Below, piece by piece: positions 32,395-51,323 of a DNA stretch of 64,000 nucleotides (positions are counted from its first letter, which is position 1; every line of letters starts with the position of its first letter). Both the position numbers and the translations under genes were made by a program. The stretch is from assembly GCA_965649765.1 (NCBI GenBank), contig OZ287759.1, forward strand, positions 43,710,001-43,774,000, given 5' to 3'. A model generated the notes under the pieces. That model saw only the letters and a program-made list of their open reading frames with translations. It did no database searches and was not told the DNA's origin. Origin of the DNA: Bispira polyomma (taxonomy: Eukaryota).

Positions 32395-33383
32395 TTACCC
32401 AGAAGTAGGTTGGAGAGCAGATCTGAAGGAGTCAACAACCTGAAAACCAGTCTGTGCAGAATCTGTTATATACCTCCACACGCAGTCCGATGTCCAGGTG
32501 CCATGACGCTGGATGTCGTGGATGTTGACATTATTGTTAAACGCGAAAGTGGCACCTGAACGCCGGAAGGCATGAAAAGTGAGATTTAGATGAGCACATC
32601 CCAGGAGTTGCAGAATGTTTTTCAGATGGCGCCGTACCCTGGTGTCAGTCAGGGGAATCCAAGAGCCACCTAGCCTGTATTGTAAAAGGGGAGCATTAGG
32701 GCCAGAGTGGGTGAGGGCTAAAGCATTCTTCAAAGCAGCAACTGGGCACAGATTAGAATTTCGCAGTACAGGAATATTTAATAATTTAATCTGATTATTC
32801 GTCTGCATGGTCTTTGACCATTTAATCAATAAGGTAATGTAGCCAGGTTTAAAAAGCACATCCCCTCTGGCCAAGTGCTTGAGGGGAGAAAAAGTCGCCA
32901 CAGAGTGGGGACACAAATTTGACAGCCTCAGAAAACTAAAAAAGCTGTTTAGGTAAACGGCCTTAAAAATTTGGCCCATATAAGTGCTATCACACTTAGC
33001 CACTAGGGCAGTTAACAAGGGGATATCAAATATAGCCTTTAACTTTGCTTGCAGGGGTCTATTGACAGCAAGAGCCTTACTAAAGTGGCCTATACGGGGA
33101 TCTAAAAAACAGTCCACATCTATATGAAAGAGAATGCACTTAGCCTTAACGACCGAGAGGTGATTAGCGATTTGAGAAGCTGACATGTGATTAAAGCTTA
33201 AAAATTCTAGAAAAGATAGAATACCAAACACATTCACCTGATCAACTGGCCATTGCATGAAGATCCCAAAGGCTAAAAACAGCTTAAACATACTGTCTTA
33301 GGCTCTAGCTGTAGACTCCGCGAAGGCAAAGTGCTGTTTTTTACAGGCTCAGCTTCTAAGTAAAGCATCCAATGGGTGAATGT
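32395..33383 (-). pseudogene. tyrosine recombinase of element 2
   Basis: Catalytic R (FLRLSN), K (WSKT), HxxR (HAFRRSG), H/W (RHGTW) and Y (VWRY) are present; two in-frame stops lie in the 92 nt upstream of the ATG at 33291. Confidence 0.9.
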
Positions 33384-33418
33384 CTGAAACATAAGGTACT
33401 GTATAGACAAATCAAGGG

Positions 33419-35639
33419 TTATATTGTCTGGTCAATTTCCAGTAAAGTGACATCAGTCTCCAGCCAATTAACTGGGCCAGCCCATTGAGCCAGTAAGTAC
33501 TCATTATTAGAAGTTTTGTTCCAACGGTAGAGAAGGTCTGCAATTATGTTCTTTTTACCTAGTATATGGACCACTCTGATATCTATATCAAATTTACTAG
33601 CCCACATAAAGATATTTCGACTATAGGCAGCAAGCAAAGGATCTTGGGTGCGTCCTGTTTCTAGAATACTCACTACAGCTTGATTATCACATTTAAAAAG
33701 GATTCTACTCCCCTTCCAGACCCTGGACCATAGTTTCAATGCTACTAGTATGTTAATCATTTCCAGGGAGGCAATATTATCAGTGGTCATAGACTCGGGT
33801 ACTTGTAAGTTATAAACTTCGTTCCGACAGATCCCCCCATGCCAGTTAAGCAACAATCTAACTCAACTTGTGCATAGATGGCCTTATGTGCAAAAAAGGA
33901 AACCCCATTAAACTGTTGCATAAAGGTTCTGAACCAGTTCAGATCACGCCTAAATTCCTCAGTTACACAAAATCTGATCTTGCTTTGGTTATCCCTAAGT
34001 AACTGCAGCATTCGATTGAGAAATACTCTGGCATATCTTATGCACTTGGCCACATATAATAAAGACCCTAACAGGGATTGGAGTTCTTTCTTTGTACAAT
34101 ATTTTTTATTCTTCCAAGTAGCACATTTTTCCCTAATTTCGCTCATTTTCTCAGCCGGAATGGAAGTAGTGAAATTCTCAGTATTTATAAGTATACCTAG
34201 ACATACAAACCTGAGTACTAGGGGGCACGAGCTTTGTCTGACTTACTGTCAGCCCTAGCTCCCTCAGAAGAGCCTGCAACCTGATATAGGTTATTGTATT
34301 TATTGGAAGCGATACAGTCAAAAAATTATCTACGTAGTTGTGGACTTTGTGTCCTTCTGCCTTCATGATAAATCTGACTGTGTCTGACAAACGCTGAAAT
34401 ATAGTACTTCCATTTTGATACCCAAAGGGGAGACACTTATCGATGTAATATTGCTTCCATTTCAGACCTAGTAGATTGATGTCCCTGGGATTGATCGGCA
34501 CGTGCCTAAAGGCCCTACTCACGTCGACTTTAAATATGTGGCAACCTTTACCCAAGCTGGTGACCTCCTTAGTGAGGTCATCAATAGACAGATAGGACAA
34601 TATAAATTCTGTTTCGAGATAGGAAATTTGAGATGCACCTCCATTTACTGAGTGGCCCTGTGACCAACTCAGATCCACTATAACTCTCCTGTTAACAGAA
34701 CTGGATTTCTCTCGTGTCATCATAGGTGAGCAACGTAATTGTTTAAGAGGGGGTTCTTTAAAAGGGCCTAATATCGCCCCAAATTTACACTCTTCCTCAA
34801 GATAAGCTTCTATATGCTCTGGAAAACTATCAGCAGAACTATGATTGGGATTTTCGGTTTGACTAATTTCGTTTCTACACACATCCAAAGGGAAGCCATA
34901 TTTTACCAGCAATGGCAATTGCCAGTCCCAGTAGTCAGTAAAATAGTCTTTCCATTTGTCAGCATTTAATTGGGATTTTACCGCCAGTTGTAAGCCCTTA
35001 TAGTTATGTCTCCCATCCCCCCGCAGTTTAGAATGCATTTCAAAGACATCGAGACCATGATTTTTTGAGCCATTATCCAGAATTTTGCATCCCAGAGTTG
35101 TGAGAGGGGTAAACCCATAACTTACATTGTTCTGCTCTTTCCATTTTTGATGAGTTTCATTAGACAAGGCCTTGGCCAGCAAATCTCGTTTATTACGTTT
35201 CTGCTTGAGCTCTAACGCAGGAGGCAACTAAATCACCCAAATTTGTTTCCTTATGGGTCTTTATGCAAGGAACCTTGCCTTTACATTTGCCATTGACACC
35301 ACTGATTTTGTTAGCTATTGGTTGTTGAGGACCCTTATAGGCTTCCATACTTGCACTTCCACTACCCTTGACCTCCTCATTGCTGCCCAAGGCAACATTG
35401 GTTTGGCTGAGGGGGTGAAATCTATTATGCCACGCAGAAGTGCGACACGTGTTAATTTTGTTCGAATTTACAATGGTAACCCTTTGGTCCAACTCACAGC
35501 TGTTGCTTTTATGTCGCGTGGAAGGAACAAAGGGGAACTTATTGACACTATTTACACTCGGTTTTTTGTGAATGCGTGGGAGGACCTGCCTGTGCACTTT
35601 CTTTACACAGGTCCGAATTTCCCCCACACGTTCACTCAC
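33419..35639 (-). pseudogene. RT-RNaseH of element 2 (frameshifted)
   Basis: KVDVSRAFRHVP, CLPFG, YVDNF, LLGSLLYVAKC, CDNQAVV, ADLLYR spread over consecutive ORFs. Confidence 0.9.
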
Positions 35640-36856: not shown

Positions 36857-38660
36857 TAAAACCAGTCAAAAAATCAGACATAAACATCGAATTTCCAAGA
36901 TGTCTGTCTAAAAGTTGCTTGTACTGTGAACGCTATTGTTATAATGGCGGGCAATTTGAAGACGGTCACTTTATATACTACTCGCAATCAATGAAGCGTG
37001 GAGAGGAAGACTGGTACCCCAAGAACTGAGATCGCCAGCGCTGGGGCACTGCCTTACAAATTATTTCAATGTTTCTTTCAAAGATTCTATAAAATTAGTG
37101 TTTCCAAATTTGTGTTTCTGTTTTAATTATTCTTTCAATTATTCCATTAATTAGGGTTTTAAATGTGTAACCATTCTCCTGTTGTCACCTAAGATATCAT
37201 GATATTTCCCCTTTCCAAATTCTAAATGTTTTAATATCTACCCTTTCTTTAAAATTATATTGTTTTCTGCATACACCATTGTGTGTAATTATTTTAATTC
37301 CATTATTTTAATTTGGTTCCATGTTATGTTTTGGTCTGTGTTTATTTTTATGTTGGCCGCGGCCACCAGTGGGCGTTCACATTAAAATTAATATGTCATG
37401 ATACCTCTTGTGTCAACTTGTATTTCATTTACAATTAATTATGCATCCATTTTACATACATTTTGCCATGTTACACCCAACTGGGTATCCCATTTCATCA
37501 ATAAAACTGTATTAAACTTTATTATTATGATTATTACCTCTTGTGTTTCACTTAACATGTGTTTTATGTATTATTGATTTAAAACAATTCTTTAGTGTGA
37601 CCTTGATTGACCTTTAATTTAGTTTAAGGTTCACTTTAAGTTAAAATCCCTTTTTGATAGTTGTCTTTTTATGCGGCAACTTAGATAAGATCTCAGTGCC
37701 TCAGCTGCAAAAGTCTCATCTTGGCCATGGTGTTTCTACTCTACAGTTTATCTCGACAGGTGTAAAGAACAGGAGATGTTCAGGTGTCACGCTACCACGT
37801 TTACTTGAACATACAAACTAGTATACTGATTTAGTATAATTTAAGCAGTACCTAGGTTGGGGATGTAAGATAGTACAACTTAGATTTGGACTTGGTTGGT
37901 GGGATTCCCAGGTGGTTGGGGACAGTTTGTTGGTCTGGAACCACAGAGGAAATAGCCGACAATAAGGTTGCAATGAGTTTGGTCATCCCCGAGTACTAAA
38001 AAATACTGAAATCAGGTGATAAGGGCAGACATATATAATGGTTGTTTGAGCCATAAATTAACCTGGTGGCAGCTACTTGACTATAAAGTCTCATACTTTA
38101 TTGTTTTGGCCTAAGAAGGTATCCCTGTTCCGCCACATATAAGTCATATTCAGGCTGAGCATACGTTAGAGAATACCGGCCCAGGATAATTAAACCCTTT
38201 GCAAAGAGACTACTGACTGTGCCTGAGAGAATATACAACTAACTACAGGCTGTCCAGAGCAAGGATGATTGTGGTAAATGCATTTTTCATACTGGCCAGC
38301 CATTTTACCTGTCTCTTAACCACAAGACAACAGCTGCCTGATGTGATGAATGACTTGGTGATGCCTTGTTGTTGCCTGCACAACATTATGCGTCTGCTTT
38401 ACCCCCAAGCACATCAAAGACTAGCCGATGATGAAAACCAGGATCATAGATTGGTCAGCGGAAGGTGGACAAATGCTGCAAACATGGCAGACATGGATGA
38501 ACCACAACACGGCAACTGACTGACTGTGGCAGCAAAAAGGTAAAGACTTTATTCAAAGCATTACTACAGCAGCCCAGCAGGTTCTGTGCCATGGCAAGAC
38601 AAGATGATCTAGAAGCTCCTACCACAGGGTTGTAAGACCCAGGCAGTAATGGCAAAAACA

Positions 38661-38681
38661 GGCTCTTTCTAGAGCCACCCA
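38661..38681 (+). promoter_or_regulatory. histone-mRNA-type 3' stem-loop after Harbinger transposase
   Basis: AAAAACA-GGCTCT-TTCT-AGAGCC-ACCCA, 48 nt after the stop codon. Confidence 0.85.
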
Positions 38682-39956
38682 ATTTATTCAAATACAGTTA
38701 TTAAACTGTTTTTGTTCCAAAAAACCTAAAAACAAAACAAAACACAACTGTCCCTGAAAACAACGACTAATGAATTCAAAATCAGTACACAAGGCAAAAT
38801 GCAACCCCCAAAAAATTCAGACAATGATAAGCCACCCACCCAACCCAAACACAAGATGAAGTAAAAAATTAAACAAAGTCTCACAATTGACCCCAACATT
38901 AAATTTTTTTAACCCTTTCTTGAAAGTACCCATACAATATTGTAGCCTGCAAGAGTTCCCAGCTCACATAAGATGCCGCTGAGGCCAAGGGAGGAAGCCC
39001 TTTTGGTGGTGGTTTCTACTAGAGCAGCTCCAGGCGCAGCTGGGTTCCCGGTGCTGTAGCTGTTGCCGGGTACTAGACTGGGGGGTTGATGTGATGGTCT
39101 GAGGTATTGGGGTAGCGTGAAAGTCTCCATCTGGGTTCTTTGTTGCCCGGAAGGACTACCTTTTTTCGCCTTCTTCTGCTGCTCCTGCTCTCTGTGCTCT
39201 TCAGACTTTGTGGTGTACTTCTGCACCATTAGGAAGCTGTCTGTCTTGAATCCATAAACTCCGGGTGAATTGTCTTGATTTAGGCCGAATCCAACCCGCC
39301 TAGGCATCTTGGGACCACACTTCAGTGGGCTTGTGCATGAACTCCTTCCACTGGATCCCCATGGTCTGGCTGGTCTCAGTCCTTTTCCTCAGGGGCACCA
39401 TCAGTTCAGTGACGGTAGAGATGGGTTTGGTCTTCTTTGCCAACCTCCTTCCAGTGTTAACTGGGGTAGGGCTCCTCACATCATTTGCACTGTCCACATC
39501 AATAACATCTCCTGGCTGGTCGCCGCGACTGTTTGTCCGGCTGTTCATTCTTTTAGAAGGAGGTTGGCTCATGGTCTGTTGCTGTGCATCCTATAGATGT
39601 GTTTCTCCAGGTAGGTCATCTTCAATTTTATCCATTTGGCCTTGTCTCCCATGTCGTCTGCTCCAGCGCCTGATTTGCCAGTCTTCCCTGGTACAAATAT
39701 TTTTACGTAAAAGTCACGCACCCCTGGTACCACCCCTTCAGCCTAGTCCCTGTCACCTTGTTCTCTATTGGTTTAACATGGATCTCTTCAGCCTTGTCCT
39801 GCCACATCCTTTTCTGAGAGTCTTTGTAGTCCGAGAACCCACTGCTCCACCCACTCCAGCAAAGCATCCTCCACCTTATTCTCCACAAAGAGTGGGGCAT
39901 TACGTTTCCTCCTCCCCTTCCCCTCACCAGGATCATCATGCCACTGCATACAGTTG

Positions 39957-40118
39957 ATCAAGGTTCTGCATTGAAACCAGCGGCCAACAGTAAGGAACTA
40001 CCACATTTCCCACATAGACATTGACGAGAGGCGAACTGGTGACCATTCAATCTCCAGAGGTGAGAGACCAGTGATTGTGAAGTACACTGCTTGCCTACCA
40101 CTATGCCACCGTGGTCCC
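39957..40118 (-). mobile_element. tRNA-derived SINE, 3'-truncated; same family as 49210-49466
   Basis: Reverse complement aligns with 49210-49362 (TTCACAATCACTGGTCTCTCACCTCTGG; TATGTGGGAAA; GCAGAACCTTGA). Confidence 0.85.
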
Positions 40119-43099: not shown

Positions 43100-45748
43100 C
43101 AGTCAGTGTGCGATGTAACTGTGGTCGCGCTCAACTGCCGTGACTAACTCTTCGGTCCATCTATGAACTTGTAAAATTTAGATGCCCAACTTGCAAGTAA
43201 CTTTTTAAGGTTAATTTCTGATTAGTTGCGACATTTTACTCTCATATTTGATACATATTTCTTCATTTTCTAAGAGTTTTGCAAGGTCATTGTTGTTTAC
43301 CTTCTTTGTGAATCAATCTAAGAAGCATTTTCATTGGCTAAATACTGGGCTGTTGCTAAAATTCGTGGGCAATTCAAAATTCTCATATAAAATAGTAGAA
43401 TGACTTTGAATATATGAAGTGCCAAAGTTATTTCGCATTGATAAAAAATAATATTATATACTATGAATTTAACATTCATTCCCAAAGTAACACAATTTGT
43501 CTGTTGAATTTTGAGTGGTTGTCATTCGGAACTACTTGCATATTTAAAAGTATATAGGGTCAATCATGCTTACTATTTTGATTAGTAATACTGTGGGTGG
43601 GTAAAACTCGGAACTCCATTGTGAACTCCCTGGGAGAGCAAAATCGGCTAAATTGTGGCAGAAAATGTCTAGAAGTCGAATATGTGGCTATAAACTCACC
43701 TAGAAGTCTGGGAGGTGGCTGTAAAGTTGTATAGAAGTCTGGAAGGTGGCTGTAAAATTGCCTAAAAGTCTGGCAGATGACTATAAAATGGCCCGGGGTT
43801 CTGGTAAGTAGGTGCAACATTACTTAGGGGTCTGGAAACTGGCTGCTGTAAACTTGCCAATAGGTCTGCGAAGTGGCTGCAAAATTACCCGGAAGTTTGG
43901 GAAGTGGATGTTGATTTCCTAGAGGTGTGATAGGTTACTATAAAATTGCCTTGGTGTCTTGGAAGTGGCTGTAAAATTGCCACGGTTCTGGGAGTGGTTG
44001 TAACATTACTTAGGGATAAGTAAAGAGGCTGTAAAATTTCAGGATGTACACATCTATTTTAGCTCACAATGTCACTGTATATGTCTGTCTGCAAGCTTAT
44101 ATCTAGGTCTCATATAGACAAACCAGCAAAAAGAAGACACCACAAACATTTTTGTATCTATCAGTGAGTTTATGTTTCAACTTTGTTTCAGATTTGTCTA
44201 CATTCGAAGCACTTCGTTCATAACCCTGAGTATCCATAAGCATCAGTGGAGCTGCTGGGTACATTTTAGGATGTTTAAAACATTTGTGGCAGAAAGCTTG
44301 TTTGTGACGATTTTTGTGGGAGACGGGGCAGTTGCGCATACATCTTGATTAGTTTTAATTAGTTTTGGAACATTACTTATCAGTAGCAGGTTGTGTTAGC
44401 TTGTTGTACATTTGTGTCAAGACGTAGCAGTAAGTAACCATTCGTTTGTATTAGCGACGTATCAGTGGGTATTCCTTGGTATTTGTGATGTCTTTGTTTC
44501 TTATTGGTGGGGATTGGTGTCAGTGGGTGTTAGTGGTCGTGTCAGTTATGTGGTACAGGTTCATTTCAGATTATCCCAAAAGCACCACATCTTTGTGATG
44601 GTGGGATTGGGGAGGGTTTGAGGAGGTCTATTCGTGGATGAAAGTCCCCGAACCAGGATTTGTTAGATGCTACAAATACTGATGAATAAACATCTGTGTG
44701 AGATCAGGTCTTTGCTTACAAGTGCCGAATTTGTTCATATTTAGAAGAACTACCCGTGTTTATGAATTCATACAATGTCCAGACATTTATTGAGAAACCA
44801 TCAAATATACTATTACCAAAGCACTTCATCAAAAGTAGTTCAAATTAAACCTCAAAGAGTTAACCTCTACGTTTAACTGTTATATTGTGTTGACTTTACC
44901 ACAATTACATATTACAAATCTGTACATATGTATGACTTATGATGATTATGTGTATTGGTGGTGAAAATTTGGACCTGGCGATAAATAAAAAAAGGGGAGT
45001 AGCATTGATATAAAGCAACAGAGATATTCAAATATAATACCCCTGTTCCACTTAACCAATCATAGCTCCCAACCATCTCGATCTGATGATCTGGAGCTAC
45101 TCAGGGGTACAATTGGGAGTTGCTTCCGACTTATTTTTGGCTATCAGCAGCAATCGGGCCACTTGCTCAGGTTTTTAAACGTATTTGAAAACCTGTGCGA
45201 TAGGGTGACACACAATACCAATCAGGAGCAATTGGGAGCAATCGACTTATCGTTATGCCCAATGTTTTCAACGACCTATCTTTACAATCATCCCCGCCCA
45301 GGACCCAAATTGTGAGCAATTTTACAGAAAACCATTCTGAGTGATCGCGCCATCCCAATGATAGATTGGGAAGTCATCAACTTATCAGCCGTTGGTCCTG
45401 ACTTATCTTGTCATATGCTAAGAATAACTTGTTGGACTGTAAAGTTAACTTAGGCATGGTTTCCAATAGCATTGTAAAGATAACTCTTGAACACAACAAC
45501 TCAGGCCTGACAATGATAACTTGCGAGTGCATTTTTTTTGCTCACGAGTCAAATCGGAGGACCACAAACATATAAAAGGATACCATGACAGTAATCTTCA
45601 TCTCATTTAATTTTTAGCACCGAAGAGTACACATCAGAAAGTGGCAATTTTCATTGAATATATATTATAAGTTTAGGTCCTTGCTTTTTTGTTGTGAGTT
45701 ATAAGTTTAAAAGTTTTATATTGTACATTGTATATTTTTTGATTAAAT

Positions 45749-47120
45749 ATGCCACCCAAGAAGAGAGGATGGAAGAGGAAGATGGTGACTTATTATGAGG
45801 AGGAGGCTAGGGAGTTTAATGTTAACATACCTGAAGATGCTCTGACTGTGGTACCGGAGACCCAGTTATCTCAGTTTACAGCCCTGCAAGACACAGCAGA
45901 AACCCAGGATACAGAGGGACACGATTTAACTTGTGACGCCGAGGTGGCGGTCTTTTCCAGAAAGCAGATGAAGGAGCAGATGCAGACAGTGCTACTGACC
46001 GACAAACTGGAGGAGGCTGTCATCGACTTCCTCAAGGACAATGAGGGGCTATACAACACACACTGCACTGATTACAAGGACAACCAGAAAAAAAGAGTTC
46101 TGCGGGGTAAGGGGGCTTGATACTGGGGACATCAAGAAGTGGTTTCAGTCCCAGAGCACCATCTACGGGAAGATGAGTGTGCCAAAATCAGGTGAAGTCC
46201 CCCCCCCCCGGAGTTGACAGACAGATAAAGCCGGGTGAAGGACAACTTCAAGTTCCTGCTGACTCACATCATCCGCCAAGTGAACAGGACGGAGGGGTTC
46301 AAGTCCATCTCATCTGCCTTTGCTTCTGCTGGTCGTGGGTCGCAGACACCAACAGGGTCCCAGTCTGACACAGACCAGGCTAAACTGGAGGTGGAGGAGT
46401 CCTTACCGTTGTTGGCACCAGCTAGACTTTTCCAACAGTCATCTACCTATGGAGGGCAGTCCACTCCGACCCACTGTAATGCAATGACAGCCGACTTTAA
46501 GGATAGCATGTCCACGATGGAAGATAGGATAGCCGGCTTCCTGAAGGATGCCGTCAAACCAAATTCTGAGAAACCAAGAGCTACCTTCATGAACTGGCTC
46601 TCCTTAGAGACTGATAAACTGTTGGAAACTTTGTTCAACACTTTCAGAAAAGAGCAACTTACAGGAACAGTCTCAACAGGGGGTTGGACTCACACACCTC
46701 TAGCAAAGACCACAACAGTATCCACAATTTCAACCACAGCCAAGTACCACCTATGATATGGGGTCACCTACTTTTGTCCCACAGCAGCAACAGCAAGAAC
46801 AGCTGTAAATGTACCACATACAGCAATAACAACTCAGACCACAGATGTCACAACCTCCAAACCATTCACCCATCAAGACAGTTCAACAGTCACCAACACC
46901 AAGTGGAAGTGTAGCTAGTATATCTGATATCATGGGGACTATTCTGGCAATAGACAATCCCGGATCAGCTCAACAGTCTCATCAATGGTCAGACATATGG
47001 GCATAGGCCCAGGGGATATAAGCTACCAGAGCATTGACACAACTTCACATTATGAGCATCAGATAACAGACACAACCACCACAGCCCCCTCCTTAGCCCA
47101 AACCTCTGTTGAACCTGGTA
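45749..47120 (+). pseudogene. Harbinger MADF/Myb-SANT-like accessory protein
   Basis: MPPKKRGWKRK (NLS-like); EEAVIDFLKDNEGLYN...DYKD...IKKWFQSQST; Q/S/T-rich tail; TATAAAA at ~45571. Confidence 0.75.
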
Positions 47121-47142
47121 GACCAGGAGAGTGTACACGTCA

Positions 47143-47163
47143 AAACCTTTTCAGGGCCACCCT
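47143..47163 (+). promoter_or_regulatory. decayed histone-type stem-loop after MADF-like gene
   Basis: AAACCT-TTTC-AGGGCC-ACCCT; loop, 3' arm and ACCC are canonical, 5' arm damaged. Confidence 0.6.
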
Positions 47164-47620
47164 AATGTTTTAAAAATATTATCCAAGCTGTTTGTAAATT
47201 TAAAAAAAAACCTCACTACAAGAAGCATACTAGCCCAAAAAAAAACTTATCATACGTAAACACATAACAAAAACAATACTTGGCCCCTCCCCATAGAAAT
47301 AAAAATACACTGTTAAATTTTCAACTTGTGAAAGCCTTTAAAATATAACTCTGTTAACAACATTGTATGTATATAGGGGCAGGTAGTTTTTGACATAAGT
47401 CTATTTGATGGGGACAACAACTAAAAAAAGTTGTATTTAAGTATTTAAAATATTTCTACTGGGAGAGGCTATTATTTATCAGAGTTGTATTTGAAGGGGT
47501 TTTAATTCTGTTTTTATTTGTGTGTGCGTGAGGTAATTTATTTTGTGGGGCCAGTTCGCTTTTTATAGTGAGGTTTTATTTTCATTTAACAAACAGCTCA
47601 GATAATGTTTTTGGAACATT

Positions 47621-47641
47621 ATGGTGGCCCTGAAGAGGGCC
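47621..47641 (-). promoter_or_regulatory. histone-mRNA-type 3' stem-loop after Harbinger transposase
   Basis: AACCAATC-GGCCCT-CTTC-AGGGCC-ACCAT on minus, 25 nt after the inferred stop TGA (47669-47667). Confidence 0.88.
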
Positions 47642-47666
47642 GATTGGTTCTTCTTGCAGCTCAGCT

Positions 47667-48900
47667 TCATATTCTGTCGTTCTGGCACTGCCCCCTCATT
47701 GAGAAAGTACCCCATCAGTAGCTCACTCATTTGCTGCCCTGCTTAGATTTCTGTGGTCAGGGGGTTAGTGGTCTCCCACCAGTGCTTCCTGTGGGATGGG
47801 TGGGTCATCTTCGCTGTTTGCCTGGGGCTTTGCCTGGTTGATGGTGGTTGTTATCATATTATGCAAGACAACCCAGGCCATGTTTACAGTGGCTACCACT
47901 GTTGGTTCTTGTTGCATTGTTGTCACCAAGAGAAGGAATCTATGGACTAGTATTCCAAATTAATTCTCCAAAACCCTTCAACCCCTGGAAATTCTTTAGT
48001 TATATATGTGCTCGTAGGGGTTCATTCCTTGTCTGAAGAAGGGCTTCATCAGCCAGGGCTTTAGGGAAAATGTGTCGTCACCCAAGATAAAGTAGAGAAT
48101 GGGGGCCTAAAAGCACTTATGGCTTCAGTGGGGAAGTTGACTGAGCCATCTTCTATCCACTGTTTCAGTTCAGATTGATTGAAGATCTGTGCATCTAAGC
48201 TGGAGCTACTGGATCCAAGGTCCACCCAGAGGAATCTGTATTCTGCGTCAACGAAAGTCAGCATTACAATCTAGTGGAACCCTTGTAATTGAAGTATTCG
48301 CTCCACCCTTTCCTTGGGCATCTAATTGCAATGTGTTTTCCATCGATGGAGCCCATGACATTGGACACATTCCACATCTGCCAGTACTGAGCCTTCACCC
48401 TCTTCCAGCTCTCTGGAGTTGCAGGGCAAGACAAGAATTCCTCCTGGTATTCATCAATGATTGCCTGGCATACATGGAGGACTAACTTGGTAATGGTGGA
48501 CCTCCCGACTGCAAAGGAGTAATGTAGGGAACTGTCGATCTTCAGTCTAGGGAACAGTGGCTTCCTAAACCAGGTGGCCTGCTTCTCGATCCTATGCCTC
48601 ACCCTACTCTTTACCTTTTGGAGTGCATCATGGGCCATCCTCATGAAGTTACAGTATGACTCCCCATCTTGTAGTTCCAGGCATGGGAGAAGTGCACAGT
48701 AATGCCCATGTTCTTCACGTTGCTGGGCCATGGCTTTACCCAAAATCGATGTCTAGCCCTTCCTCGTGTGATGACTTTCCATTGAACTGTTATTCTTTGT
48801 GTCTGTCTCTCTTCCAAACATTTCTATTGTTCTTTGCAGATGTAAAAAACCCATCACTTGCAGTTGCACTGAAGCAAATAAAACTTGAATTACCCTCATA
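47667..48900 (-). pseudogene. PIF/Harbinger DDE transposase
   Basis: NVMGSIDGKHIAIRCP, YFNYKG, VDAEYRFLWVDLG, DAQIF, and C-terminal YFLNEGAVP; frameshifts and deletions. Confidence 0.92.
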
Positions 48901-49209
48901 ATCTCTATTACACTTTGTAGAACCATCTTGACAATTAAGATTTCAGATAAGCAACCTATATATAGGGTTGATACTTGACAATCTTGGACATTTCGAGGTT
49001 CCCACCAACGTTAATTACCAGGATCTGTTGGAGTAATCGAGCAGCCTCCCTGAGTCATCGTGAACCACTATGAGTGGATCGGGCAGCCTCCCCGAGTTAT
49101 CTTTACTATCGTAAGCAGTACTATCGACTTATCGCCCCGGATGGAGATGGTTGGGATGGCCATTCCTGCATCGGGAAGTCAAATTGGGCCGATTGTTAAG
49201 AACGGAACC

Positions 49210-49466
49210 GGGGCCGCGGTGGCCCAGTGGTTAGCAAGCATTGCGCTTCACAATCACTGGTCTCTCACCTCTGGGTGGCGCGAGTTTGAATCCCGTCGAT
49301 GCCTATGTGGGAAAGGTGGTAGTTCCTCACTGTGGGTCGTTGGTTTCTCTGCAGAACCTTGACCGACTGTATGCAGTGTTTCCTCCAGCGTTTCCAACTA
49401 CCCGTCCCAATATAACCTACTAAAAGGTACTAGAGTGGACGTTAAATATCTAAATTCAAATTCAAA
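49210..49466 (+). mobile_element. full-length tRNA-derived SINE with 14-bp TSD
   Basis: A box TGGCCCAGTGG, B box GAGTTTGAATCC, (AATTCA)n tail; TTAAGAACGGAACC duplicated at 49196-49209 and 49467-49480. Confidence 0.95.
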
Positions 49467-51323
49467 TTAAGAACGGAACCCCCGACATTATGATTATAAT
49501 TGTGTGACGCAGATTTTTCCGTGCTTTTCTTAAAAAATTGGGGGCAAATGATCCTGATCGATCGGCCAAGTGAAACACCCCATAACAACTAAATATATTG
49601 CAAACACCACCTAGCAAAAGTACTGTGTTACTCCATAGGGTGGCCAAACAATTACACAGTACACCAGATACATATAGTGAGTTTTTATTAGTGTGCAAGT
49701 GATTCACTTTGAAGTACAATAACACAAACCATATGTGGTAAATTGTCTACATTAGTCATTCAGAATGTACACGTCATATGACACGATTCACTCGGGTCGA
49801 TAGTTTATACTTTTACTCCAGCATATGCATGCAAGTCACAGGACACTATTCACTGCGGTCGAAAATCTACTTCAAATACTGACACAGATTTTAGTGTGTG
49901 TGTGTGGTACTTTTTTCAACATAATATAAATAGACTTTTTATGTGCATTATTTGCATTTGCAAAGAATCTGTGAACATAATGTAATCTACCTCGGGCACA
50001 AACAAATGGAATGATCTTCCATATTGAATTAATACTTTTTTTATTTACATTTTATTTGATGTCTATTCTCCTTAAAAGTGATCAAAAATGCTCTTTATTC
50101 TACATTATACTAACAGACTGCACTACAAGCAATGTAATAAATTCTGAACTTTTAAAATGTCAAATTAAATTACATGACAATATTAGTTCACCTAAGTATA
50201 GGCTAGGGACCATGTTTGTTTATACTTTGAAAATACGGAATACTTGGTGAGGTGCCGAAAAGTTATTTATGTCCAACATCCAGAATGTTTTTCAGACATA
50301 CACCTTAATTATATCACATCCCTTTTATGGTTCTCAAAATGGCACGAAGAAGTGTGCCCTCTTTGAAAATAGAGAATACTAGTTTTAAAGAGAAAATCCC
50401 CAGGCGTAATTTAAATTATATTGGAAGAGGATATGGTCAGTGGCACCGTATTCACTTTTATCAAAGCAAGTGTTAAGATTTAATCTAGCACTTTTGTGTA
50501 CTAGATTTAAGCCTAAGACTTGGGCAAGCCCATCGGTGAATATGAGCCTAGGTTACAGTACACAAAGAAACCATAAAGTTATCAAACACTGTGTTCATTG
50601 CCTTATATCCTGTACTGTACTTTTATCAAATAATTTTGTGCATCATTCAAATCGAAGTTATATCACTGTAGTTACATGCAATTCAGTAACATCAACGTTG
50701 AAATATTCCCTAATTTGCATAATACAAGGCACAATACCAATAGAACAAATTCGGTTAATACTTTATAGTATATACATCAGTCGAGTATAAGTGATGTATT
50801 AGTATATAGACATAAAGTTATTCTATAAAGGTTACTTTTAGTTTATTTTTACCAATGATCTTGAAAAGTAAAAAATAAAGTAACTCAGTGAAAATGTATA
50901 AGCTTAGAATCATTAAAAACTATGCAGAATACTTTGTTCGTTTTACTTTTTTTTATTATAGTTTGACATTACATATATATCAAAATAATAACTTCAATAA
51001 ATTCTCCTGATTAGAAAAACAAGTAAGGCAAATTCAAAATATTGCACAAATTAGAACATTTAATTTTTTGTCAATCCATTTAATAACAAAATTCACTCTG
51101 GAAAAATGTTCATAGTTTTCAATTATTCTCATTTCATTTAAATTAAACCTAAATAGTATAAGTATAAATAGCGGGTATTTAATATATATATATAATGTAA
51201 AAATACTATATGTTATGACAATATGAAATAGTATGTGTTATAAAGTGCCTCATTTAGGTTGGACTGACTGGATAGTATTTTTGTTCTTCTATATTATATG
51301 TAATACAAAAAAATATATATTAG

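What the first reader, a model, noticed from the sequence alone, without database searches (positions are those of the whole stretch)
47143..47669. Harbinger transposon genes end in replication-dependent histone mRNA stem-loops (candidate SLBP/U7-processed, S-phase-coupled transposon)
Seen: both convergent genes of the 45038-49582 Harbinger end in a histone-like hairpin. The transposase has GGCCCT-CTTC-AGGGCC-ACCA (minus, 47641-47622), 25 nt after its stop. The MADF-like gene has a damaged AAACCT-TTTC-AGGGCC-ACCC (47143-47162). The same motif recurs, in sense orientation and just 3' of the coding region, in two other diverged Harbingers (38661, 63381). Stem position 4 covaries (T-A vs C-G). 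I found no histone ORF in the window. Established: a 6-bp stem GGYYYU/ARRRCC with a 4-nt loop, A/C-rich 5' flank and ACC(C)A 3' flank shortly after the stop is the SLBP-binding element of metazoan replication-dependent histone mRNAs. Those mRNAs are non-polyadenylated, U7-cleaved and S-phase restricted. Inference: these cut-and-paste elements may use the histone pathway to limit transposase and cofactor to S phase, when transposition can raise copy number, or to be stored in oocytes. Their mRNAs would be missed by poly(A) RNA-seq. I do not know of a description of this, but could not search.
Basis: partly seen in the sequence, partly recalled or inferred. Interest (0 to 1): 0.95.

Follow-up and report, generated by a model that had tools for sequence, protein, structure and literature searches.

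The report
Harbinger transposons with histone-type mRNA ends
Hundreds of cut-and-paste transposon copies in this animal, and scattered related transposons in other sequence samples, end their genes with the hairpin and downstream signal thought to be exclusive to histone messenger RNAs; they probably use the cell's histone RNA-finishing machinery, but no RNA data could be examined.

Summary
The transposase hairpin (47641-47626, minus strand, 25 nt after the stop) passes Rfam Histone3's cut-off. The partner-gene hairpin is a deletion-damaged copy within a ~200-nt inverted duplication, so the two are not independent. In this genome 438 dispersed sites carry a perfect hairpin plus the downstream element of the host's own histone genes (control 0), and 46% of transposase C-terminal motifs are followed by the hairpin's 3' arm. 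Among 80 metagenome Harbinger loci chosen by transposase alone, 9 have a perfect hairpin 23-107 nt after the stop and none elsewhere. Stem changes are compensatory, and a purine box mostly follows at fixed spacing. Carriers are not one clade (AU p=5e-10), so gains or losses were repeated. Best reading: SLBP/U7-type 3' ends on transposon mRNAs (~0.7). S-phase coupling is inference only (~0.4). Against: no RNA data, one abundant subfamily has a broken transposase hairpin, U7 is only a candidate. No paper describing this was found. This scan noted the same phenomenon before at other places of this genome (s1-590156, s1-688760, s1-686109, s1-637096).

The parts
45038..49582 (.). Degenerate PIF/Harbinger element with two convergent genes; imperfect TIRs (14/24), TAA on both flanks (45035-45037, 49583-49585)
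45749..47121 (+). Partner (Myb/MADF-like) gene, broken; the stop is inferred as TAG 47119-47121 from relatives and is not secure
   Evidence: 32-44% to partner ORFs of L002, L005, L009; weak MADF hit in L009 (E 0.006)
47143..47163 (+). Partner-gene histone-type stem-loop with 5' arm deleted, plus ACCC tail
47171..47192 (+). Downstream element (A-rich box, then AAGCT box) after the partner hairpin
   Evidence: alignment with host histone genes
47146..47243 (+). Left arm of the inverted duplication of the two 3' regions
   Evidence: I18, 82%
47541..47638 (-). Right arm of the inverted duplication
   Evidence: I18
47592..47613 (-). Histone downstream element candidate: CAAAAACA box 12 nt after the stem, then GAGCT box; same layout in host H2A, H2B, H4 and H1 genes
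47621..47641 (-). Perfect histone stem-loop (6-bp stem, 4-nt loop, ACCA tail), 25 nt after the transposase stop
   Evidence: Rfam RF00032 37.3 bits; fold
47667..48743 (-). Harbinger DDE transposase, broken by stops and frameshifts; stop TGA 47669-47667
   Evidence: about 42% to P0001 (PF13359, E 3.5e-31)
38241..38612 (+). C-terminal part of a second Harbinger transposase
   Evidence: tblastn
38661..38681 (+). Perfect stem-loop 48 nt after that transposase stop
63381..63401 (+). Stem-loop (5 of 6 pairs) with downstream element after a MADF-like gene of a third element

Best explanation
These Harbinger lineages have taken up the complete 3'-processing cassette of replication-dependent histone genes: stem-loop, ACC(C/A)A tail and downstream element, about 25-60 nt after the stop. 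In active copies the transposase mRNA, and in some subfamilies the partner mRNA, is most likely bound by SLBP, cut about 5 nt after the stem by the U7 snRNP/CPSF73 complex, and translated without a poly(A) tail. SHOWN here: sequence, position, strand, covariation, match to the host's downstream element, recurrence across the transposase tree, an SLBP gene in the genome. INFERRED: SLBP binding and U7 cleavage. MORE SPECULATIVE (about 0.4): the benefit is coupling to S phase or SLBP-rich germ cells, where cut-and-paste during replication raises copy number. Alternative benefits are tight termination of convergent genes (less double-stranded RNA) or escape from poly(A)-linked surveillance. The window's own copy is dead.
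For: Genome-wide Rfam scan: hits 1-7 and 9 are Harbinger loci and rank with or above real histone genes. Exact hairpin pattern 2488 matches vs 0 control (includes histone arrays). GGCCC-type hairpin plus RAGCT box: 438 matches vs 0, dispersed over the listed contigs. 168 of 364 transposase C-terminal motifs have the 3' arm 40-70 nt downstream, control 0, across subfamilies with unrelated spacers. Identity of transposon to histone sites is 85% in the stem, 83% in the tail, 45% in the spacer, 76% in the purine box and 25% upstream (partly Rfam-selected). Transposase-selected metagenome set: 9 of 70 loci with a full 3' flank (the truncated L117 included among the 9) have a 16/16 hairpin on the sense strand 23-107 nt after the stop; none elsewhere in 553 kb; scores are bimodal. 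Four further loci from assemblies have it (L084, L167, L172, L173). Three stem pairs show two-sided changes, 0/500 shuffles. A purine box starts 12-14 nt after the stem in 10 of 12. 11 of 12 carriers have an uninterrupted transposase frame. SLBP gene present. The 30 ISL2EU-like transposase loci have no hairpin of their own.
Against: One abundant subfamily (roughly a third of the first 100 rows, counted by eye) has a 3-nt insertion in the transposase-side loop yet multiplied; it may be non-autonomous, not tested. Most Harbingers sampled elsewhere lack the hairpin (about 87%), so it is dispensable for the superfamily. AATAAA lies downstream on both strands (47298; 47580, 47542, 47518 on minus). 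U7 was not found by Rfam and is only a candidate. From my own knowledge, efficient histone processing is linked to histone promoters and histone locus bodies, which dispersed transposons may not reach.
Confidence: 0.7

Rival explanations
1. SLBP binds the hairpin (export, translation, oocyte storage) on polyadenylated transcripts and U7 cleavage is minor: a bifunctional 3' end like that of some invertebrate histone genes.
For: AATAAA downstream of both window hairpins, of several foreign carriers and of a host H4 gene.
Against: The downstream element is kept at fixed spacing and matches the host's histone genes; its known role is U7 pairing. AATAAA is as common in hairpin-less loci.
Confidence: 0.13
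2. Passive capture: a piece of histone 3' flank was picked up and carried along, and copied to the partner gene by inverted duplication or conversion, without function.
For: The two 3' regions of one element are homologous over about 200 nt, beyond the signal. A subfamily with a broken loop multiplied. Distribution is patchy.
Against: At least 6-10 changes on the tree, yet always the same position, strand and spacing. Foreign carriers have perfect stems and no half-decayed intermediates in the unbiased set. Compensatory changes. Flanks diverge to background while the cassette persists. No histone coding remnant next to the window's hairpins.
Confidence: 0.1
3. The palindrome works as DNA, for example as a binding site for the Myb/MADF partner, or as a Pol II terminator independent of SLBP.
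For: Harbinger partner proteins bind short palindromic motifs (own knowledge).
Against: The motif is internal, not subterminal. It is strictly sense-strand, with asymmetric ACCCA tail, U-rich loop and downstream element. G-U pairs are tolerated.
Confidence: 0.04
4. Chance resemblance.
For: The motif is short.
Against: Reversed-pattern controls are 0. The chance that all 9 unbiased hits fall in the 2% of bases just after the stop is about 5e-16, treating loci as independent.
Confidence: 0.01

Closest known systems
Replication-dependent histone mRNA 3' end (Rfam RF00032; SLBP, U7 snRNP, CPSF73)
   Same: 16-nt hairpin consensus with invariant G2-C and loop U; A/C-rich 5' flank; ACC(C/A)A tail; mostly 25-60 nt after the stop (range given in bioRxiv 10.64898/2026.10.14.759114); purine-rich downstream element like the host's own; mostly uninterrupted ORFs.
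   Different: It sits on transposase and partner genes. [quoted passage not shown] Transposon copies prefer C-G at stem position 4, host histones U-A. Copies are dispersed, not clustered.
PIF/Harbinger DNA transposons (HARBI1-like DDE transposase PF13359/PF04827 plus Myb/MADF partner)
   Same: Two genes, DDE transposase about 42% identical to intact relatives whose homologues are named HARBI1/ALP1-like, 3-nt TAA flanks, short TIRs.
   Different: No histone-type 3' cassette was found described in the paper searches. Most relatives sampled lack it, including two from Strongylocentrotus, one from Patella and one from Mercenaria.

Membership tests
PIF/Harbinger transposon | Harbinger-type DDE transposase | tested here: met
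   42% to P0001 (PF13359, E 3.5e-31), whose homologues are named HARBI1/ALP1-like; broken in this copy
PIF/Harbinger transposon | Second gene with Myb/SANT/MADF domain | tested here: inconclusive
   No Pfam hit for the window's pieces. Homologous ORF in L009 has MADF at E 0.006 and window 61719 at E 3e-4, both below cut-off
PIF/Harbinger transposon | TIRs and 3-bp TWA target duplication | tested here: inconclusive
   TAA on both flanks, but TIRs only 14/24 identical; other copies' ends could not be fetched
Histone 3' processing signal | Consensus stem-loop above Rfam gathering score | tested here: met
   37.3 bits; genome relatives up to 45.6; 6 of 11 foreign carriers above cut-off, the others 25-32 bits. 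Not met by the damaged copy at 47143
Histone 3' processing signal | About 25-60 nt after the stop, sense strand | tested here: met
   25 and 48 nt in the window; 23-67 nt in 12 of 13 foreign carriers and 107 nt in one
Histone 3' processing signal | Downstream element at fixed distance | tested here: met
   Same two-box element as host H2A, H2B, H4 and H1; purine box at +12 to +14 in 10 of 12 foreign carriers
Histone 3' processing signal | Downstream element complementary to the host's U7 snRNA | tested here: inconclusive
   RF00066 found nothing over cut-off. Two candidates at G000:C5:22420644 and 22553898 have the complement followed by a U7-type Sm site and are not simply a transposon minus strand. 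They were selected for complementarity, and their 3' hairpin was not seen
Histone 3' processing signal | Host encodes SLBP | tested here: met
   PF15247 in two exons at C5:32.895-32.898 Mb
Replication-dependent histone-type mRNA | Transcript ends 4-5 nt after the stem, no poly(A) | not testable with these tools
Replication-dependent histone-type mRNA | SLBP binding, U7 dependence, S-phase-restricted level | not testable with these tools
   Needs experiments

The most novel reading that the evidence does not exclude
Harbinger transposons in several animal lineages repeatedly captured their host's histone 3'-processing cassette and make the first known non-histone protein-coding mRNAs finished by SLBP/U7, which ties transposase production to DNA replication or germ-line SLBP and hides the transcripts from poly(A)-based surveys.
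Probability: 0.4. Interest if true: 0.95.

Novelty: new variant of a known kind. Interest (0 to 1): 0.82.

Why it matters
Replication-dependent histone mRNAs are described as the only cellular mRNAs ending in this stem-loop instead of poly(A) (PMC4604434). A transposon using the pathway would break that exclusivity. It would give a post-transcriptional route to S-phase-timed cut-and-paste transposition. It would also be a natural test of whether the 3' cassette works away from histone promoters and clusters. Practically, expression of these elements would be underestimated by poly(A) RNA-seq, and dispersed Rfam Histone3 hits in invertebrate genomes may be transposons, not histone pseudogenes.

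Tried and rejected
One search sent in the same batch still returned loci (used only for the U7 check); all later own-genome searches used loci=0, so I saw only coordinates, counts and the matched letters. RF00066 and a first U7 pattern gave only repeats or chance-level matches. The 30 best PF13359 hits were ISL2EU-like, useful only as a negative control; the single hairpin among them belongs to an H4 gene. Single origin of the trait in the sampled transposases was rejected. Hosts of the metagenome contigs could not be identified, so host-matching of the downstream element is shown only for this genome. Ten paper searches found no description; Lopez & Samuelsson 2008 was not held, and Repbase/Dfam could not be searched. 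The intron-less trend (Fisher p 3.5e-4) is confounded by clade and is only suggestive.

Full report
Observation. The window comes from a 1.035-Gb animal genome (G000, C12:43.71-43.77 Mb); I did not identify the species. The region 45038-49582 is a decayed two-gene Harbinger. It has a DDE transposase on the minus strand (about 42% to intact relatives) and a convergent partner gene on the plus strand. Both genes are broken. TAA flanks both ends and the TIRs are 14/24 identical. The only Rfam hit in the window is Histone3 at 47646-47600 on minus, 37.3 bits against a cut-off of 34, with the stem 25 nt after the transposase stop. The partner-side motif at 47143 is a damaged copy: a deletion removed its 5' arm and it does not fold. 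The two 3' regions are an inverted duplication (98 nt at 82%, about 200 nt with gaps), seen also in L004, so they are one cassette used twice. The sites at 38661 (48 nt after another transposase stop) and 63381 (after a MADF-like gene) are real. No H2A, H2B, H4 or H1 ORF lies in the window.

Genome-wide. Of the nine best RF00032 hits in the genome, eight are Harbinger loci; they score with or above real H2A and H1 genes. An exact hairpin pattern occurs 2488 times against 0 for the reversed control; the tandem histone-type arrays carry U-A at stem position 4 and dispersed sites mostly C-G. The C-G type followed 18-30 nt later by an RAGCT box occurs 438 times against 0. The stretch between holds an A-rich box 12 nt after the stem. 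Host H2A, H2B, H4 and H1 genes have the same two boxes at the same spacing. Transposon-to-histone identity is 25% upstream, 85% in the stem, 83% in the tail, 45% in the spacer, 76% in the first box and about 30% further on (these loci were partly chosen by the Rfam model). Choosing by transposase instead: 364 sites encode the C-terminal AVPWQ motif and 168 (46%) have the exact 3' arm plus tail 40-70 nt downstream, control 0, across subfamilies with unrelated spacers. Thirty ISL2EU-like transposase loci have none. An SLBP gene is present. U7 was not found by Rfam. Two places on C5 have the complement of the downstream element followed by a site fitting the U7 Sm consensus RUUUNUCYNG (PMC5054213), and they do not continue as a transposon minus strand. 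They pair with this genome's elements (-8 to -23 kcal/mol) better than with foreign ones (-2 to -12; background median -7), but this is circular and the 3' hairpin was not seen.

Other samples. Eighty metagenome loci were selected by transposase alone. Nine have a 16/16 hairpin with all six pairs, on the sense strand 23-107 nt after the stop, and there is none elsewhere in 553 kb; scores are bimodal (25-26 versus 20 or less). Rfam scores them 25-38 bits. Assembly look-ups added L084, L167, L172 and L173 with a hairpin and L171 with a damaged one; two Strongylocentrotus loci, one Patella, one Mercenaria and L168 have none. In 18 aligned hairpins 99% of cells pair and three of six pairs show two-sided changes, 0/500 shuffles (relatedness not controlled). 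A purine box begins 12-14 nt after the stem in 10 of 12, with differing sequences, one type resembling the sea-urchin element as I recall it. The hosts of these contigs are unknown, so host matching is shown only for G000. On the transposase tree the trait needs 10 changes, 6 forced by strong branches, and a single clade is rejected (p-AU 5e-10). Gain cannot be told from loss.

Mechanism. The anatomy is that of the whole histone 3'-processing signal, not only a hairpin. By the established pathway (bioRxiv 10.64898/2026.10.14.759114), SLBP binds the stem, U7 pairs downstream and CPSF73 cuts five nucleotides after the stem, giving a non-polyadenylated mRNA. Keeping stem, tail, spacing and downstream box through deep divergence, with compensatory changes, is best explained by use of this pathway in active lineages (0.7). 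The benefit is not shown. S-phase or germ-line coupling is plausible because cut-and-paste elements gain copies during replication (own knowledge). Prompt termination of convergent genes and escape from poly(A)-linked control are alternatives. Against: no RNA data; a large subfamily with a 7-nt loop on the transposase side; downstream AATAAA sites; absence from most Harbingers.

Comparison and novelty. The element is a Harbinger by its transposase; the partner domain and TIR tests were inconclusive in this decayed copy. The cassette meets the sequence criteria of a histone 3' signal; the RNA-level criteria could not be tested. [quoted passage not shown] A 2026 eukaryote-wide survey does not mention transposons. 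Ten searches found no report of this pairing, but subscription journals, Repbase and Dfam were out of reach. This scan's notes record the same phenomenon at four other places of this genome; they agree but are not independent evidence, and were read after my own tests had established the main result.

No intact copy from this genome was read.

Verdict. A real, statistically overwhelming and recurrent feature: a known transposon family carrying a known RNA-processing signal that was believed exclusive to histone genes. New variant of a known kind, interest 0.82; function likely but untested.

Noticed in passing
G000:C5:22420644-22420675 and C5:22553898-22553929 (+): Two U7 snRNA candidates: 20 nt complementary to the host histone downstream element, followed by a U7-type Sm site. 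3' hairpin not seen; selection was by complementarity.
   Followed up: partly
e.g. G000:C1:8955926(-)/8960633(+), C1:20724912/20729624, C2:7440142/7444843: Abundant subfamily with a 3-nt insertion in the transposase-side loop, while a perfect hairpin plus downstream element lies about 4.7 kb away on the other strand, facing outward (probably divergent gene layout; inferred from coordinates).
   Followed up: partly
window 49212-49466 and 39942-40037: SINE-like insertion (tRNA-like head by eye) inside the Harbinger, with a 14-nt flanking duplication; a second partial copy lies in the 38-40 kb element.
   Followed up: no
window 22115-23860 and 43219-44736: Two inverted copies of a repeat element carrying a 31-nt tandem array.
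   Followed up: no
window 32395-35227 (-) and 11524-12357 (-): Reverse transcriptase plus weak tyrosine-recombinase ORFs (DIRS-like layout); separate LINE-type endonuclease ORF.
   Followed up: no
G000:C4:54.707-54.812 Mb; C1:30.81-30.99 Mb: Tandem array of about 61 hairpin-bearing units of 1727 nt encoding histone H1 only; separate array with a 4.8-kb unit and four hairpins per unit (core histones presumed).
   Followed up: partly
L007:1568-1542; L095:1813-1934: A second, degenerate hairpin-like sequence next to the main one, suggesting tandem duplication of the cassette.
   Followed up: no
L057: Dispersed H4 gene with stem-loop about 750 nt from an ISL2EU-like transposase, convergent.
   Followed up: no
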